Shown: one piece after another, positions 7,442 to 27,738 of the stretch | Numbering within the stretch: position 1 is the stretch's first letter | How the letters are laid out: each line of letters starts with the position of its first letter | Source of the DNA: Perkinsus chesapeaki ATCC PRA-425 | Lineage: Eukaryota; Protista; Perkinsozoa | Direction of reading: 5' to 3' | Assembly: GCA_013115145.1 (NCBI GenBank) | Contig: JAAPAO010000112.1 | Span: 1-64,000 of the forward strand | Length of the DNA stretch: 64,000 nucleotides | Made by a program: the position numbers and the translations under genes | Notes under the pieces: model-generated | Seen by the model: only the letters and a program-made list of their open reading frames with translations | Told to the model about the DNA's origin: nothing | The model's database searches: none

Positions 7442-9199
7442 ATGGTTGTTGTTGTAATCCCTATCCTATCCCTATTACTATCATCTACTATAGCATATGC
7501 TACTCTTACCTCTAGTAGTGCTAGAATGCTGCTTACTACTACTAGGTTCTGTAATAATGATTTAATGGGTAGTAATGCTCATGCCGTCCCGTGTGGTGTA
7601 TCAGCAGCTGCTGGTACTGAAGGTCTAACGTTACCAGGTATGGATGATGGTTATATTACTACTCGTGAAGATGTTATTATAGCCAATGATGGTCAAGTAA
7701 CAGTTAAAGCATTACCTAATCATCCTTATCAATATTTTATGGATATACAAACTCCTAATCATTTAAGAGTTAAACAATTATTCATGAATGAAGCCTTTGT
7801 ATTAAAGGATGATTATATTGATGATGATACTGTTGGTGTTGATACATCATCAATAGGTAGTAATACTATGGAAGATGATGGTTGGGTTCATGTAGGTATT
7901 GTTGATGGTATTGGTGATAAATATAATAAAGTTAATAAATGGGTTAAGAAAGGTGTTGAAGGGGTTGATCCTTCTAGTGGTATGAACTATACAGCTTTAT
8001 ATATGACTGGTATTGCACCAGATACCTGGACACTTTATGAAGCTGATGATACACCTTTAGTAATGGTTGTTAGTAATAGTTTTAAGAATGATAGAGTATT
8101 CCAATTATCTACATTCACACACTTTACTAAACTACAAAATGGTATAACTGTTGATGAGGCTGAAAGTACCATGGACTCAATTTATCATGTAAAACAACAA
8201 CAACATCGTAAGCTACAACCTAATGATGATAGTAGTTCCATCACACCTCCTCCTACAGTAGATGTTGATATGATATCATCAGACTATCTACCGGAGGCAT
8301 CTCGTGCTTACTTTCAGACTGTTGATTCTAATGATATTGATTGGATGACAATGCCCTATCATGATAATAGTAACCTTCGTCGTCAATCTTCTTCTTCTTC
8401 CTCCACCTTTGAGGGTATTGATTATTTTACTATTCCTAAAGGTTCTGCGGCTGATATATATTTCCATGCCAACACTAGAACCTCCTCCTCCCTAGTAGCT
8501 GCTGTTGTTGATAGTACTAATAAGCAACCACAGTTCCAATGGGAGTATCCTACTACTTGTATGGGTAATATAAATGATAAATATTGTTTACATGCTGATG
8601 CTAATGCAACTACTGAATATATGTCAGTTGATGGTGGTGTTATATTTAGAGACCCTAAGATACCATCATATCAATCACATTTGGATATAGGTGTTGTAAT
8701 GAGTGGTCAAAAAGATCCTATAGTAATTGATTTACATGCTCAGGCTGATGGTTGTGCTGATGTATTCCAATATGGGGCTTCGGATGACGATGATGTTAAG
8801 ATTATTATTAATCTATGTATGTCGGGTAACTTTGAAGGTGATTCACTTATTAAATCGGATAATAGAACCTTCGAAGCTGATATCGATGCCAAGGCTACAT
8901 TCTCATTTGCTATACCACATTTTACTACAATAACAACCCCTATATCATCTACTATAGCATGTACTGCTGGACCTAATTATGATATAGGTGTTCTTGGTAA
9001 CCTTGGTACTGGTGTTGATCTTAAATTTACAGGTGGTGGTATTATGTTAGATCTTAAGGGAAGTACTGTTGATAACCTTCCTAAGAAATGGCAGTTTAAT
9101 TCTGGTGTAACTGTTGATGGATGGGTTAGTGTTCTAGCCTATAAACATAAATGGTCACATCGTTGGGTAATGTGGCAGACCGGACCTGAGAATATGTAA
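7442..9199 (+). CDS. Intronless 585-aa secreted protein of unknown function
   Basis: Uninterrupted ORF with a signal-peptide-like N-terminus ([20 protein letters not shown]). It has two beta-rich halves separated by an S/P/T/Q linker. Confidence 0.85.
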   Translation: MVVVVIPILSLLLSSTIAYATLTSSSARMLLTTTRFCNNDLMGSNAHAVPCGVSAAAGTEGLTLPGMDDGYITTREDVIIANDGQVTVKALPNHPYQYFMDIQTPNHLRVKQLFMNEAFVLKDDYIDDDTVGVDTSSIGSNTMEDDGWVHVGIVDGIGDKYNKVNKWVKKGVEGVDPSSGMNYTALYMTGIAPDTWTLYEADDTPLVMVVSNSFKNDRVFQLSTFTHFTKLQNGITVDEAESTMDSIYHVKQQQHRKLQPNDDSSSITPPPTVDVDMISSDYLPEASRAYFQTVDSNDIDWMTMPYHDNSNLRRQSSSSSSTFEGIDYFTIPKGSAADIYFHANTRTSSSLVAAVVDSTNKQPQFQWEYPTTCMGNINDKYCLHADANATTEYMSVDGGVIFRDPKIPSYQSHLDIGVVMSGQKDPIVIDLHAQADGCADVFQYGASDDDDVKIIINLCMSGNFEGDSLIKSDNRTFEADIDAKATFSFAIPHFTTITTPISSTIACTAGPNYDIGVLGNLGTGVDLKFTGGGIMLDLKGSTVDNLPKKWQFNSGVTVDGWVSVLAYKHKWSHRWVMWQTGPENM

Positions 9200-9577: not shown

Positions 9578-10544
9578 TTACATCAAGTGTTCCTCCTCTT
9601 CCTCCTCCGCCTCATTATCCTGGTTTTTAGTAGTACCACCAATAAAGGTTATTACCGTAGATGCGGCAAGTAGGACGAATAATATCTAAACATAAGAACA
9701 GCCGTAGTAGGGATAGGTTATTAATAATGTTGTTGTTGTTGTTACCCATGATGCTGCACAGAACCATTGAACCATTTCCCCTATCTCCCAGCTTAATTGA
9801 GCATTCAGTCTGCACCATAGTCCATCCTAAAATATATAGTGCTATTGTAGTTGTTATTAATAGTAGTAGTAGATTACTCCTTGATCAAAGAATGGAGTAT
9901 CAGACATACAATATTCCCATTCTTCAAGCTGTTGAGCTGTCTCTGGTTCCCTAGCTAATCGTATCATCTCACGAAATGTCTAATAATATTACATAACCAC
10001 CCCCATCAACAGCAATGCCACCACTTACCTGGAATTCATCACAATATGGTCTAATAAACATCTTAGTAGCCTTCTCATATCCACCACCACGGCATTCACC
10101 TTTATTATAGCTTACGGCAAATGATTTAAATAAATCATCAACAAGTTGTTGAGCATAACGATCTCTAGATGGTACTAGAGTTATCTCAGCACGATCAAGT
10201 CTAAGCTTATAAAAGGTAATAGATAAATGACATAGGCTAATAGCAATACCCAACCACCATACAGTCATAACAGCAGATAAACCACCATTAATAAAGCGTA
10301 GGGGGCCAACATCTTTATTCATAGCAGCAAATGCTATACCAGAGCTACAGACCATAAGGGCTAATACACTGCTAACAATGCCCGAATCAACATGGGCAAT
10401 ACCAAAGAAATCATAATATAAAGGATTATAGCTTATCCAACCAAGAGTAGCCATAAGAGCTATACTAAATAGGATAATTATACCATTAATACCCATTAAT
10501 ATAGGACCAAATACACCATTAAGATAAGGGGCAGATGGGGGCAT
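9578..10544 (-). CDS. Tetraspanin-like four-pass membrane protein
   Basis: Exon 1 has three TM helices. A Cys-containing loop follows (GECRGG, PYCDEF, EYCMS, LWCRL across spliced exons), then a fourth TM (ILFVLLAASTVITFIGG) and an acidic tail EAEEEEEEHLM*. Confidence 0.7.
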
Positions 10545-10689
10545 TGTTTAATATATTAAAACCTGTATAAAAGGCTACGGAAATACCCTAAAAACGGATA
10601 TGGAAATACAACAACAAAATGCGCTGTTAATAAAGCGCACGCCGAAAAATAGAAGAACGCAAAGTCGTGTCACCACTTCTGTGTGTATA

Positions 10690-12716
10690 ATGGCGGCGGA
10701 GGCGGGGGCAGTTCCTCTCGTATTACCTGGACGTAGCTATGATAGAGCTGGGCAATTAGGTAGTATGGTAGTAGGGTTAATAATAGGGAATAATAGGTGA
10801 GGGGTCCTATGGGGCCGTATTAACGGTATATGAGACTGATACTGGTATTGAATATGCAGCTAAGAGATTTGAGGTAATTAATATCCATTATAATTAAATA
10901 TATTATTAGTTAAATGAAGATGATGGTTGTACTATGAGTAATGGTGCTATTATAGAAGTGTCCTATTTAAGTGCTATTAGATCAGCTAATATTGAAGGCA
11001 TAATATGTTTAGTAATAATAATAAGGTTTGTTATTATAATAATATAAGATTAGGAGGATATATGTGAATTAACTGAGGAAGGTGAGAATATATTATGTGC
11101 TGTATTACCTAAATATACATGTAATTTAGAGGATGCTATTAAAGGTAATATCCCTTATTATTATTATTATTATACCATCGTCCTATTGTGGTCAGGTGTA
11201 GCACTTACATCAAACCGTATAAGGTTATCAATAGCTTTAACTATCCTAGAGACATTATCAATATTACATGATAATGGTGTTGTACATAGGGATATCAAAA
11301 GTGCTAATATTATGTTAACAGATGATCTAAGTCCAGTAATAATAAGGACCGTATAGTATTATTTATATTATTATAAGGTACTTATAGACTTCTCATTAGC
11401 TAAATATATGCCTAATGTTACCGATACCACTACACATACTACTACTACTACTTCACTACCAAATAGTATGGGTAAACATACAGTATCAGTAGGCACTCCT
11501 ACGTATATGGCACCTGAACTAGTTGAAGCAGCAGCTAATGGTAATGCAATAAGGTATAATATATTGGATATCATTGATATATTAATGATGGATATAGTTA
11601 CGATAATAGAGTTGATAGCTGGTCTATTGGTGTAGTATTATTAGAATTATTCACTGGTAAGGCTAATAGAGTATATAGGAGGATATAGTAATAGAGTAGG
11701 TAAAGTAATAGAGGAATGTAAAGATAAAGCTGCATTTAAAATGATAGCTGATACTAAATCACGTATGTCTGATAAACCAGTACCATCTATTATTAAAGCA
11801 TTATTAGAAGTAGTAATGTGATAAGGTGGTGAGGTAAAGTATACCTAGGTGGACCCTATACATAGGATAAGATGTAAAGAGGCATATACAAGGTTAATAG
11901 AGTGTAGTAATAATAAGGAGAATAAACAACAACATAGTAATAGGGGACAATTTGAGTTGAATCATTTACGGTATTATTATGATGATTATCAGCGATGATG
12001 GTAGATGATAAAAGAATTGTTAACTGTTTTGGTAACTATACAGTAGCACCTCCAAAGAAGGGAAGTGTACAAGATTTGGACGTGTTAAAGGAAATAAGAA
12101 GGTTTTATCATTTATTAGAGATGAGTAATCCAACAACTATTAAAGCAGCTATGTAAGTTGGTTACATCATAAAGAGGAGGAGGATGAGGAGGGTTACTAT
12201 AGGTACTTTAACTCCCTATTCAACCAGTCAACCAACAAACATAGTAACATACCAGCGCCTTTACCATTACATTTAATATTGTTATCACAGAAAATCTATG
12301 AGCCTCAATCATTAGGTAGGAAGGAAGCATCAACTGAGGGGAGAAGGGAGCGGCTTATGGTTATAGATTTGGTGACCATTGATGAATTTGATGATAATGA
12401 CCCTAACCTACAGGACTTTGATATAGATGAGTATATGGCAGATGAAGTTAATATAATGAAGGCTGCTAACTGGTATTAAATTATGTATCCTGGGTATTGG
12501 ATATGTAATAATAGGTGTTGTCTAGTAGTACCAGTATCATCTAAAGAAGAGGGGGATAGTCTTATTGGGAATACTGTAAGGAAACATAAAGCACTTAAAG
12601 GTAAAAGGAAAAGGAAGGAGGAAAAACAAGCAGAAAAGAGGAAACAAAGAAGGGAAGCGGTTAAGGAGGATGGAAGATCTGACGATGATGACGAGGATAG
12701 TGATTGGTATGAATAA
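10690..12716 (+). CDS. CDK-like Ser/Thr protein kinase with C-terminal cyclin-box-like domain
   Basis: Kinase motifs: LGEGSYGAV, YAAKRF, alphaC-like GAIIEVSYLSAI, HRDIKSANIML, LIDFSLAK, VGTPTYMAPEL, VDSWSIGVVLLELFTG. Downstream exons read EIRRFYHLLEMSNPTTIKAAMYFNSLF / LHLILLSQKIYEPQSL / IDEYMADEVNIMKAANWCCL, followed by a K/R-rich tail. Confidence 0.85.
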
Positions 12717-12837: not shown

Positions 12838-13556
12838 ATGAGATCATCATCACCATTCACTTTAATGCTAACACTTATTCTTCCATTAGTTCTTATGGCT
12901 GAACCAGAACGTCAGGTTGTCGAACCTAGGATGAAAGTTGGAGGGTAATTAGTGATAAGCATAATAATAATATTAACAAGTATTATCGTAATACTTTTAG
13001 ATTCACTGATAGAGTCCAAGTATCAAATGAATGTAGCCGTACTACTGGACAGGAAGCTGCATCTAATGTAGATGCGTAAGTATACCAATAACTAGTATTA
13101 TGGTTGTTATGTATTATTTAATAGGACCCTCTGTCTTGGGGCATCTAAGGAACAATCTATACTTGATTCAGTTAAAGGACAAGTTGTTGAGATACTTCAG
13201 AAACAAGGGTATTCAGCTCAACTATTAATAATATCGTATTAGCAGCAATCGGTTCAGTTACAATGGTATTGTAAAGAACTTTGAGTTAAAGCTGGTTGAC
13301 TATGCCACTCAAGTGGTTGCTGGTAATAAGAGGTAATTAGTATTTGATGTGTTACTATTAAAGAGTAGGTATCAATCATGACATGCGTGTCCAGCTCATG
13401 CCTCATCGTGATGTGGTCCGTATCCGTGTATTTGAACCATTATATTCCCATGAGAACCAGAACTACGAAGTATCACAGTTAGAGTTTGTTGGAAAGGTTA
13501 ATGATGATGGAAAATATGAAGAGACGGAGAGAGCCATTCGTGATGATTTGCTTTAA
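12838..13556 (+). CDS. Secreted cystatin (stefin-like cysteine protease inhibitor)
   Basis: Signal peptide MRSSSPFTLMLTLILPLVLMA, N-terminal GG (MKVGGF), ILDSVKGQVVE, the canonical QVVAG hairpin (VDYATQVVAGINHDMRV) and RVFEPLYSHENQNY; five exons. Confidence 0.82.
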
Positions 13557-25800: not shown

Positions 25801-27738
25801 ACCGGTAAACAGTTCCTAACACTGTATGGTCATCAACTACCAGTAACCAGGGCTATACTATTATTATCTTAATATAACCTTATTAGGTATTAACAGTGGC
25901 ATTCTCGGATGATGGTCAACTATTAGCATCTGGTTCAGCTGATAAGAATATTAAGCTTTGGCATCCTAAGTTTGGTAGGTCTCCCCCTTCTACCAAGAGT
26001 TATTGCTATTATTATATGTATTTAGGTAATTGTCTGCGTTCTCTTCGAGCACATGAATCCTCAGTAACAAGTATAACATGGTTACCTGGTACACATTATT
26101 TAGCTAGTGTTGGTAAACTAGATGGGTTATTAAAGCTATGGGACTGTGATAGGTAGTGTTATATATTATATGGTATAATAATAACGATAATGCTTATTAT
26201 TAGATCTGAGGAGATTGCATCATTACCCGGTCATAATGGTGATGTATGGTCAGTGGCATGTGATGCTGATGGGGCTTTAATAGCTACTGGTGGAGCTGAT
26301 AGGAGTATAAGATTATGGAAGAGAACTGATGAACAAATGTTTATAGAGGAAGTAATATACACTATAACAACAACAACTTAGAATATAAGGAGGTTTAATA
26401 TACACTATAACAACAACCTAGAATATAAGGAGGTTTAATATACACTATACCNNNNNNNNNNNNNNNNNNNNNNNNNNNNNNNNNNNNNNNNNNNNNNNNN
26501 NNNNNNNNNNNNNNNNNNNNNNNNNNNNNNNNNNNNNNNNNNNNNNNNNNACCTAGAATATAAGGAGGTTTAATATACACTATACCAACAACCTAGAATA
26601 TAAGGAGGTTTAATATACACTATACCATGCATAGTCATTAGCAGCAGCAACTAGAGGCGGGGGTATAGGTGGTATTAGTAAATAGGGTGGCAGCAGCAGC
26701 TGTATTGATATGTATATTAGTGGTAGCAATCATCGTATAGTATTAATAATAATTTAGTAAATTTCGTAAATAATAGTTTAACTATTTTAAAGTAACAAGT
26801 TGTCTGTGGTGATGTTATTAGGAACAAGAGGAAGCATTAGATAGGCAGTTAGAGGAGGATGCAGCCAGGGAAGCAGCAGTAGTAACTATGGCTAGACCTA
26901 CTAGACGTAATAATAATATAATAAGGTGTATTATTATATTGGATACTAGGTACAATGGATACTGTTAAATCAGCAGAGAGGCTTATGGAAGCATTGGATG
27001 AAGTTAGAGAGGCTACTATTGAAGAAGAGAAGGAGGGGGAAGAGGAGGAAAAACAACAATCTACACCAGAAGAGTCAATAAAGGTATATAATACTATTTA
27101 TAGTTAGTAGGTTAGCTCATCATTTATTAGACATTAAGGATAATGGCTGCTATACCAGTAGCTGATATGCAAGAGGTTGTATTAGCACTACCTGTCACGT
27201 AATAATAATAGTATTATTATTATTTACCTACATGGTGTCTCGTAAGTGTTGTTGTTATTATTATTAGGTACTCTAAACGTCTATTATCAGTATTAGTAGA
27301 ACTATTATCATTCCTATCACAATCAGTACCTAAATCACAACAAGCAGCTATTAGAGGAGGCTTACCTATTGAACTATGCTTATCTGTTGGACTTAGCCTT
27401 ATACAGGCACAGGCACCATATCTAGTACATGATCCTACTAGTAGACGATTATTAGTACATCTACGTGATTTACTGTAATAAAATATATAGTGTTATTATT
27501 TAATTATAATAGTTATTAATAGGTATGATGTTGCTAGTACTGCTGTTGATGAGGCAGGTGTAGCTAGGGCAGCTGCCATAATGGCCAGGGAAGAGTAAGG
27601 CTTTGGCACGTGTTGTTATTTAGGATATGGTATTAATATAGGTTAAAGCGTAGAAGGGAGATAGGGGACCTAGATGCAGAAGATAGGGCATATAGGAAAT
27701 CAAGGAGAATAGCAGGAGGAGGAGGAGCAGGCAAATGA
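22851..27738 (+). CDS. UTP12: U3 snoRNA-associated WD40 protein Utp12/Dip2/WDR3
   Basis: MPKAYLRY start, [33 protein letters not shown]...[26 protein letters not shown]...[18 protein letters not shown] and [13 protein letters not shown]. One intron spans an assembly gap. Confidence 0.9.
26354..26627. repeat. Intronic ~40-bp tandem minisatellite (ACAACCTAGAATATAAGGAGGTTTAATATACACTATACC) interrupted by an N gap at 26452-26550
   Basis: Near-identical units lie directly on both sides of the run of Ns. Confidence 0.9.

What the first reader, a model, noticed from the sequence alone, without database searches (positions are those of the whole stretch)
10690..12716. CDK-like kinase apparently fused in cis to a cyclin box
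Seen in sequence: after a complete CDK-style kinase domain, the frame can continue through a canonical 56-nt intron (11937-11992) into EIRRFYHLLEMSNPTTIKAAMYFNSLF...LHLILLSQKIYEPQSL...IDEYMADEVNIMKAANWCCL (~12080-12525). Established: this follows the cyclin N-terminal box pattern (H1-H2 'L..ET...A..Y.DRF', H3 'L..ASK.EE', H5 'I..ME..IL..L.W/F.L'), and CDKs normally bind separately encoded cyclins. Inference: a single-chain, self-activating CDK-cyclin protein with a basic NLS-like tail, possibly for an unusual alveolate cell cycle.
Basis: partly seen in the sequence, partly recalled or inferred. Interest (0 to 1): 0.75.

Follow-up and report, generated by a model that had tools for sequence, protein, structure and literature searches.

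The report
Perkinsus kinase with conserved C-terminal extension
This is one 13-exon gene of the shellfish parasite Perkinsus chesapeaki that joins a divergent protein kinase, which is not a CDK, to a conserved helical tail domain; the tail's resemblance to a cyclin box could not be separated from chance.

Summary
The window is Perkinsus chesapeaki contig JAAPAO010000112.1.

**Confirmed.** The reading frame runs from ATG 10690 to TAA 12716 through 12 GT-AG introns of 36-56 nt. That gives 13 exons and 497 codons with no internal stop.

**The kinase and the tail are one gene.**
- The proposed 56-nt junction intron (11937-11992) sits at the same place in P. marinus and a P. marinus-like contig (56 nt) and in P. 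olseni (51 nt, containing an in-frame TGA).
- In those three loci no ATG precedes the conserved start of the downstream part.
- The downstream domain is under purifying selection similar to the kinase.
- GenBank models in P. olseni already join the two parts, for example KAF4685106.1.
- The P. chesapeaki annotation misses the kinase and calls only a 128-aa fragment, FOL47_000649.

**Not supported: a CDK.** The best solved relatives are STK33, PAK and GCN2; CDK13 ranks far lower. The motifs are HRDIKSAN, DFS and GTPTYMAPE, and there is no CMGC insert.

**Not established: a cyclin box.**
- Pfam, a PDB profile search and hhalign against 36 genuine cyclin boxes give nothing above shuffled controls.
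- Both AlphaFold models were unusable.
- Only a sub-threshold language-model lead points to Cyclin_N.

No RNA run was listed. Natural CDK-cyclin fusions are already published for oomycetes.

The parts
10690..10759 (+). Exon 1 (start ATG 10690; ends in phase 1)
   Evidence: The PGxSYDRAGQL stretch is conserved in P. olseni. An upstream in-frame ATG at 10600 is not conserved.
10797..11936 (+). Exons 2-9 of the kinase domain: 10797-10873, 10910-11011, 11054-11144, 11196-11335, 11378-11553, 11598-11656, 11700-11809, 11849-11936. They are separated by GT-AG introns of 36-51 nt.
   Evidence: Pfam Pkinase hits on single exons and 1.4e-29 on the P. olseni orthologue. All exons are 55-89% identical by tblastn in L002, L003 and L004. 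Phases checked.
11918..11926 (+). K-E-N tripeptide in the otherwise variable linker after the kinase domain. It is conserved in all four Perkinsus loci and is a candidate KEN-type degron (inference only).
   Evidence: Read from the translations and from P0016 and P0014.
11937..11992 (+). Junction intron 9: 56 nt, GTAATA...TATCAG, frame shift +2. If retained, the frame stops at TGA 11996-11998.
   Evidence: At the same position there is a 56-nt intron in P. marinus and L004 and a 51-nt intron containing an in-frame TGA in P. olseni.
11993..12152 (+). Exon 10 (C1): FGNY motif and the near-invariant EIRRFYHLLEM(S/T)NPTTIKAA stretch
   Evidence: 49-54% identity across species. Changes are biased to third codon positions upstream of the Met of LLEM.
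12203..12315 (+). Exon 11 (C2): PLHLxxLxQKIYEP helix
12316..12366 (+). Intron 11: 51 nt, in frame and stop-free in P. chesapeaki. The GenBank model FOL47_000649 reads part of it as coding.
   Evidence: In P. olseni (40 nt) and P. marinus (49 nt) it shifts the frame, so it must be spliced there. P0012 sequence.
12367..12472 (+). Exon 12 (C3): acidic loop and the DEYMxDExxIMKAANW helix
   Evidence: 61-79% identity across species.
12515..12716 (+). Exon 13 (C4): CCLVVPVSS, basic KGKRKRKEEKQAEKRKQRR stretch, acidic end, TAA stop
   Evidence: P. olseni and P. marinus carry an extra intron after ALKG that P. chesapeaki lacks.

Best explanation
Positions 10690-12716 hold one protein-coding gene of Perkinsus chesapeaki with 13 exons and 497 codons. 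It encodes a divergent eukaryotic Ser/Thr protein kinase that belongs to no recognised group. The kinase is probably active, because the G-loop, the beta3 Lys, the alphaC Glu, HRD, Asn, the Asp of DFS and APE are all present.

A short variable linker follows the kinase. After it comes a domain of about 130 residues, predicted to be helical, found so far only in Perkinsus. The protein ends in a basic stretch that looks like a nuclear-localisation signal and an acidic tail.

**Shown:** the kinase and the C-terminal domain are joined by splicing of a conserved 56-nt intron, and both parts are under purifying selection.

**Inferred:** the C-terminal domain is a built-in regulatory or docking module of the kinase, and the basic stretch sends the protein to the nucleus. 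Whether the domain has a cyclin-like fold is open.
For: **Gene model.** 1494 nt, no internal stop, 12 GT-AG introns of 36-56 nt.

**Species and locus.**

**Conservation.** Every exon is conserved in syntenic loci of P. olseni, P. marinus and a Logan contig.

**Junction intron.**
- It is conserved in position, with lengths that fit the local frames: 56, 56, 56 and 51 nt.
- No in-frame ATG precedes the conserved C1 segment in three of the four loci.
- Substitutions upstream of the first shared Met fall mostly on third codon positions.

**Selection.** dN/dS is about 0.09 for the C-domain and 0.05 for the kinase, with synonymous sites saturated.

**Independent models.** P. olseni GenBank models join the parts: P0016 (465 aa), P0020 and P0022 (411 aa) and P0015. 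The P. marinus model PMAR014543 spans the last kinase exons and the tail.

**Kinase identity.** Pkinase 1.4e-29.
Against: There is no RNA evidence. No RNA run was listed, so splicing is inferred from comparison and from other groups' gene predictions, which may themselves be ab initio.

P. chesapeaki alone has an ATG directly after the intron's acceptor. Perkinsus uses spliced-leader trans-splicing (PMC3101222). A separately trans-spliced downstream mRNA in this species therefore cannot be excluded.

The function of the C-domain rests on inference only. No family, structure or experiment supports it.
Confidence: 0.8

Rival explanations
1. The C-terminal domain is a highly diverged single cyclin-box fold that packs on helix alphaC of its own kinase and activates it in cis, giving a built-in 'cyclin' for a non-CDK kinase.
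For: - Predicted helices fall in the order and spacing of cyclin-box H1-H5, and hhalign's extended alignment is collinear with a real cyclin-box profile.
- The best local hhalign match is the H5 motif, in register.
- The Atlas feature search returned Cyclin_N clusters as top hits, 0.85-0.86, with all ten family-bearing best hits in one family or clan.
- A conserved K-E-N tripeptide and an NLS-like tail would suit a cell-cycle protein (inference).
Against: - Pfam gives no cyclin-clan hit at E <= 10 on three constructs.
- The PDB profile search finds no cyclin.
- hhalign P = 0.19, no better than shuffles and worse than the reversed alignment.
- AlphaFold2 gave no usable model.
- The Atlas score lies below the tool's 0.9 line, and the window's own piece gave no hit.
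- The domain is only about 110-130 residues, so at most one box.
- The kinase lacks CDK hallmarks.
Confidence: 0.25
2. There are two genes or two mRNAs. The kinase ends at TGA 11996-11998. The downstream part is made separately from ATG 11995, for example after spliced-leader addition at the CAG acceptor at 11990-11992.
For: ATG 11995 lies three bases after an AG acceptor in P. chesapeaki. Perkinsus trans-splices (PMC3101222, PMC2868825). The GenBank annotation of P. chesapeaki calls a separate small gene at 12121-12716.
Against: P. olseni, P. marinus and L004 have no in-frame ATG before the conserved FGNY...RRFYHLLE segment, yet that segment evolves as coding sequence. Intron length co-varies with the frame offset: 56 nt where the frames differ, 51 nt where they agree. 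The P. chesapeaki small-gene model starts inside a conserved helix and reads an intron as coding.
Confidence: 0.1
3. The C-domain is another kind of kinase-attached helical regulator. One example is a UBA/autoinhibitory-type bundle, as found after the catalytic domain of AMPK/MARK-type kinases. It would hold the kinase off until a signal arrives.
For: The best full-length solved relative is a CAMK-type kinase, STK33. The helical bundle sits directly after the kinase domain. My own reading, not a test: the LEM(S/T)NPTTIKAAM stretch loosely recalls the helix-loop-helix of a UBA domain.
Against: No Pfam hit to UBA or any other domain at E <= 10 and no PDB profile hit. The resemblance is as subjective as the cyclin one.
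Confidence: 0.12

Closest known systems
P. olseni orthologues in GenBank: KAF4685106.1 (FOZ62_030658, 465 aa), KAF4670687.1 and KAF4676127.1 (411 aa), KAF4737710.1; P. marinus PMAR014543
   Same: Same gene, same synteny and same exon structure. Identity is 68-71% (P. olseni) and 55-73% (P. marinus-like contig L004), and the kinase and C-domain are already joined in one model.
   Different: None of them is annotated with a C-terminal domain. The names are 'hypothetical protein' or an automatic 'Cdk9, partial'. Several models are truncated or mis-spliced. P. chesapeaki lacks one intron in the last exon and has a far lower GC3, 0.22 against 0.53.
Natural CDK-cyclin fusion proteins of Phytophthora infestans (e.g. 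PITG_21617), with relatives in other oomycetes, ciliates and Theileria annulata (Judelson & Ah-Fong 2010, PMC3019232)
   Same: The order is the same: kinase at the N-terminus and a proposed cyclin part at the C-terminus in one polypeptide, in the same broad group of eukaryotes (SAR).
   Different: Those proteins have true CDK domains, strong Pfam Cyclin_N plus Cyclin_C matches, and Asn in place of the catalytic Asp. The Perkinsus protein has an intact HRD, no CDK hallmarks and no Pfam cyclin match.
Cyclin N-terminal box (Pfam PF00134) of A/B-type cyclins
   Same: Similar length, all-helical prediction, and motif order by eye (AxK..E..P after a hydrophobic helix; E..I(L/M)..(L/A).(F/W).(L/C)..P at the end).
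   Different: No statistical similarity in Pfam, the PDB profile search or hhalign. There is an 11-residue acidic insertion before the last helix and no second cyclin fold.
STK33, PAK4/5/7, GCN2 and MAP3K2 kinase domains (best solved relatives)
   Same: Catalytic-loop and activation-segment motifs (HRDIK.AN, GTP.YMAPE). E-values 6e-19 to 1e-14.
   Different: Similarity is low and spread over several kinase groups. The N-lobe alone finds nothing in the PDB. The serine in DFS and a very short alphaG region are unusual.

Membership tests
Eukaryotic protein kinase (Pfam PF00069 Pkinase) | Pfam match above the gathering score, and the catalytic motifs present (GxGxxG, beta3 Lys, alphaC Glu, HRD..N, DFG-Asp, APE) | tested here: met
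   Pkinase 103.7 bits (cut-off 31.7) on orthologue P0015. Exon 5 alone scores 37.3 bits. The motifs GEGSYG, AAKRF, IIEVS, HRDIKSAN, DFS and APE are read.
Cyclin-dependent kinase (CMGC group) | Closest relatives are CDKs | tested here: not met
   The PDB phmmer search is led by STK33 (71.8 bits), PAK5/7/4 and GCN2. The first CDK, CDK13, scores 52.9 bits at about rank 34. The catalytic-loop exon hits PAK, OSR1 and ASK1.
Cyclin-dependent kinase (CMGC group) | CMGC hallmarks: HRDLKPxN loop, T-loop ending in ..WYRAPE with the CMGC arginine, and the CMGC insert between alphaG and alphaH | tested here: not met
   The sequence reads HRDIKSAN, DFSLAK and GTPTYMAPE. Only about 37 residues lie between ..LLELF and LLEV(D/E)P, where CDK2 has about 70 (CDK2 figure from my own knowledge).
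Cyclin-dependent kinase (CMGC group) | PSTAIRE-type cyclin-binding alphaC helix | tested here: inconclusive
   The helix reads SNGAIIEVSYLSAI, a loose resemblance only. The N-lobe (residues 1-100 of P0016) has no PDB match at E <= 0.01.
Cyclin (Pfam Cyclin_N PF00134 / cyclin clan) | Profile match to a cyclin-clan family | tested here: not met
   No family at E <= 10 for P0015:300-495, P0013:225-342, P0014 or the single exons. The positive controls from environmental contigs score 1e-26 to 1e-44.
Cyclin (Pfam Cyclin_N PF00134 / cyclin clan) | Profile-profile similarity to genuine cyclin boxes | tested here: not met
   hhalign of A3 against A6 (36 A/B-type boxes): probability 0.3%, P = 0.19, score 12.5. 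Shuffles give 11.4 +/- 2.3 and the reversed alignment 24.2. Only A/B-type boxes were on hand.
Cyclin (Pfam Cyclin_N PF00134 / cyclin clan) | Five-helix cyclin fold in a structure or a confident model | tested here: inconclusive
   AlphaFold2 on the domain gave mean pLDDT 37.3 and on the full length 30.4. The alignments hold only three lineages. The models were not passed to fold search, because matches to a low-confidence model mean nothing.
Cyclin (Pfam Cyclin_N PF00134 / cyclin clan) | Two tandem cyclin folds (N and C) | tested here: not met
   Only about 110-130 structured residues lie between the linker and the basic tail.
Oomycete/ciliate/Theileria CDK-cyclin fusion proteins (PMC3019232) | C-terminal Cyclin_N plus Cyclin_C found by Pfam, and Asp-to-Asn in subdomain VIb | tested here: not met
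   No Pfam cyclin match. The catalytic Asp is intact, HRD.

The most novel reading that the evidence does not exclude
A kinase that is not a CDK carries its own single, extremely diverged cyclin-box fold in cis. The box clamps alphaC to switch the kinase on. A conserved K-E-N tripeptide and a nuclear-localisation tail would tie its abundance and location to the cell cycle. This would be an independent, Perkinsus-specific invention of cyclin-type activation.
Probability: 0.2. Interest if true: 0.6.

Novelty: new member of a known kind. Interest (0 to 1): 0.25.

Why it matters
**Practical value.** This corrects an annotation. The P. chesapeaki assembly GCA_013115145.1 has no gene called over the kinase, and FOL47_000649 is a fragment of a 497-residue protein.

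**Biological value.** The finding defines a kinase limited to the genus Perkinsus, with a strongly conserved, unclassified C-terminal domain. It could be a regulatory module worth a structure or a deletion experiment in a commercially important shellfish parasite.

**Limits.** The headline idea, a self-activating CDK-cyclin chain, would not be unprecedented, because oomycete CDK-cyclin fusions were published in 2010. It is also not supported here.

Tried and rejected
- **RNA evidence.** The look-up of sequencing runs listed no RNA run.
- **Pfam on single exons.** It recognises only the kinase exons.
- **Whole-library phmmer** with exon 11 + intron 11 + exon 12 read as one open frame. It found only Perkinsus proteins and one spurious tandem-repeat protein, P0011.
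- **Word-index search** with the C-domain of P0015: only P. olseni.
- **Metagenome scans.** With P0016:283-412: 78 pattern hits, none confirmed.
- **PDB profile search:** only chance hits, pre-phenomycin and UvrD1.
- **AlphaFold2.** Both the domain and the full-length models were unusable, so no fold search was run on them.
- **MAFFT with exon fragments as separate rows.** It misplaced many rows (A1, A4). Only A3 and A5 were used.
- **Second Atlas query** with the window's own piece: no usable hit.
- **tRNA B-box in the junction intron.** None within one mismatch.
- **Joined spliced model.** All searches used single exons by reference or database orthologues. Frames and phases were checked exon by exon.

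Full report
**Where the window comes from.** The long ORF at 7442-9199 is 94% identical to FOL47_000647 of Perkinsus chesapeaki. The contig that carries it, JAAPAO010000112.1 of GCA_013115145.1, matches the window from position 1. Earlier notes of this scan had named the species, and I confirmed it here. In that GenBank annotation nothing is called between 10545 and 12120. A 128-residue 'hypothetical protein' (FOL47_000649, KAF4672341.1) is called at 12121-12716.

**The observation.** Reading the three frames gives a gene of 13 exons from ATG 10690 to TAA 12714-12716.
- There are 12 introns of 36-56 nt. All are GT...AG and most begin GTA.
- Checked exon by exon with phase tracking, the coding length is 1494 nt, or 497 codons plus the stop, with no internal stop.
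It moves the frame by +2, exactly what is needed to pass from the kinase frame into the downstream frame.
- If the intron is retained, the frame ends at TGA 11996-11998, and an ATG lies at 11995.

**Is the junction real?** No RNA run was listed for this stretch, so I used comparison instead.
- Through the neighbouring divergent gene (9972-10544, minus strand) I reached syntenic loci in P. olseni (L002), P. marinus (L003) and a P. marinus-like Logan contig (L004).
- tblastn with each window exon on its own finds every exon, in order, in those loci. The four downstream exons score 46-79% identity. The first kinase exons are missing from the P. marinus locus, probably an assembly gap.
- At the junction, P. 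marinus and L004 have a 56-nt GT...AG interval that again shifts the frame by +2. P. olseni, where the two exons happen to share a frame, has a 51-nt interval that contains an in-frame TGA.
- In those three loci no in-frame ATG lies between the preceding stop and the conserved K-P-L-x-D-Y-F-G-N-Y...RRFYHLLE segment. The first Met is the one inside LLEM.
- That segment nevertheless evolves as coding sequence. Differences at codon positions 1, 2 and 3 are 10, 4 and 17 between P. chesapeaki and P. olseni, and 4, 2 and 8 between P. olseni and P. marinus.
- Across the three downstream exons tested (C1-C3), dN/dS is about 0.09 against 0.05 for the kinase exons, with synonymous sites saturated.
- Independent GenBank models in P. 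olseni already join the parts. KAF4685106.1 (P0016, 465 aa) runs from the glycine loop to the acidic end, and KAF4670687.1 and KAF4676127.1 (411 aa) run to the third downstream exon. The P. marinus model PMAR014543 spans the last kinase exons and the tail, though it skips two exons.

I therefore take the single-chain reading as well supported, at about 0.85. One caveat is that those models may be ab initio. A second is that Perkinsus trans-splices a leader (PMC3101222, PMC2868825), so P. chesapeaki, with its ATG three bases after the acceptor, could in principle also make a separate downstream mRNA.

**What kind of kinase?** It is a complete eukaryotic protein kinase. Pkinase scores 1.4e-29 on the orthologue, and single exons score 2.7e-9 and 7.6e-4. 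All catalytic residues are present, with DFS in place of DFG. It is not CDK-like.
- The kinase part of P0016 finds STK33 (6e-19), then PAK5/7/4, GCN2, phosphorylase kinase and MAP3K2. The first CDK, CDK13, comes at 3.6e-13.
- The catalytic-loop exon finds PAK4, OSR1 and ASK1.
- The N-lobe alone finds nothing in the PDB at E <= 0.01.
- The motifs are HRDIKSAN and GTPTYMAPE, and the alphaG-alphaH region is too short to hold a CMGC insert.
- The 'Cdk9, partial' name on two P. olseni entries is an automatic label.

The tests give the following.
- Pfam finds no family at E <= 10 on three constructs that cover the domain.
- A profile of the domain (A3) finds no cyclin among PDB sequences.
- For a profile-profile test I fetched real cyclin boxes with a degenerate DNA pattern for M-R-x-I-L-V-D-W-L from metagenome contigs. 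I kept 66 open frames, confirmed three as Cyclin_N at 1e-26 to 1e-44, and aligned 36 of them (A6).
- hhalign of A3 against A6 gives probability 0.3%, P = 0.19 and score 12.5. The only local match is the last-helix motif, in register.
Even so, 200 column shuffles of A3 score 11.4 +/- 2.3, 55 of them at or above the real score, and the reversed alignment scores 24.2.
- AlphaFold2 gave mean pLDDT 37 for the domain and 30 for the full length. The alignments hold only three lineages, so neither the fold nor any packing on alphaC can be judged. I did not run fold searches on such models.
- The one positive sign is the Atlas feature search, where Cyclin_N clusters lead at 0.85-0.86. The tool's own text says scores under 0.9 are leads only, and the window's own piece gave no hit.
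- No relative of the domain was found outside Perkinsus.

Membership in the cyclin family is therefore not met. A very diverged cyclin-like fold is neither shown nor excluded, and I put it at about one in four. Only A/B-type boxes could be tested.

**How it most likely works.**
- Shown: this is one gene, with a kinase that has all its catalytic residues and a C-terminal domain under selection. A basic stretch, G-K-R-K-R-K...E-K-Q..K-R, and an acidic end are conserved in all lineages.
- Inferred: the domain is a cis regulatory or docking module, and the basic stretch acts in nuclear import.
- A K-E-N tripeptide is conserved in the otherwise variable linker in all four loci. It could be a degron, but this is speculation.

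**Comparison with what is known.** Natural CDK-cyclin fusions exist. Judelson & Ah-Fong 2010 (PMC3019232) confirmed four in Phytophthora infestans by RT-PCR and reported relatives in other oomycetes, ciliates and Theileria. Those have true CDK domains, strong Cyclin_N and Cyclin_C matches, and Asn for the catalytic Asp. The Perkinsus protein shares none of these features, so it is not a member of that family. The other hits for 'cyclin-CDK fusion' in the literature search appear, from their titles and abstracts, to concern engineered fusions and conventional cyclin-CDK complexes rather than natural fusion genes.

**Verdict.** The sequence observation is sound and the fusion is real with good probability. 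The kinase is an orphan kinase rather than a CDK, and the cyclin identity is unproven. The fused gene is already in GenBank for P. olseni. The new points are the missing annotation in P. chesapeaki and the recognition of a conserved, unclassified C-terminal domain. Interest is modest.

**Note on method.** Exons were searched one by one by reference, and database orthologues stood in for the full length.

Noticed in passing
window 10545-12716: The GenBank annotation of P. chesapeaki (GCA_013115145.1) calls no gene over the kinase exons. FOL47_000649 (128 aa, 12121-12716) starts inside a conserved helix, skips exon 11 and reads part of intron 11 as coding. It is a fragment of the 497-codon gene.
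   Followed up: yes
window 1-34000 versus 34001-64000; gap of 99 N at 26452-26550: There is a sharp compositional split, 34% G+C in the first 34 kb against 45% in the rest. The kinase gene has GC3 of 0.22 here, against 0.53 in P. olseni and 0.41 in the P. marinus-like contig, while the protein is conserved.
   Followed up: partly
window 11918-11926; L002, L003 and L004 at the matching place: A K-E-N tripeptide is conserved in all four Perkinsus loci inside an otherwise poorly conserved linker between the kinase and the C-domain. It is a possible APC/C-type degron. This is untested, and a conserved tripeptide could be chance.
   Followed up: no
window 12590-12605; L002 about 7847-7892, L003 about 8549-8590: P. 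olseni, P. marinus and L004 have an extra short intron between ...LKG and KRKRK in the last exon. P. chesapeaki lacks it, so an intron was lost or gained within the genus.
   Followed up: partly
L002 (P. olseni), L003 (P. marinus); proteins P0014, P0015, P0017: Several GenBank models of the orthologue are faulty. PMAR014543 skips part of exon 10 and all of exon 11. KAF4737710.1 reads through the last intron into the next gene. KAF4714085.1 retains an intron after exon 10. Two entries carry an automatic 'Cdk9' name that the kinase does not merit.
   Followed up: partly
window 7442-9199: This gene belongs to a DUF6740 (PF20525) family with several paralogues of 30-38% identity in P. chesapeaki and P. 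olseni.
   Followed up: no
window 10544-10690: Only about 145 bp separate the start codons of the kinase gene and the divergently oriented membrane-protein gene FOL47_000648. About 120 bp separate its stop from the next gene, at 12838. The locus is very compact.
   Followed up: no
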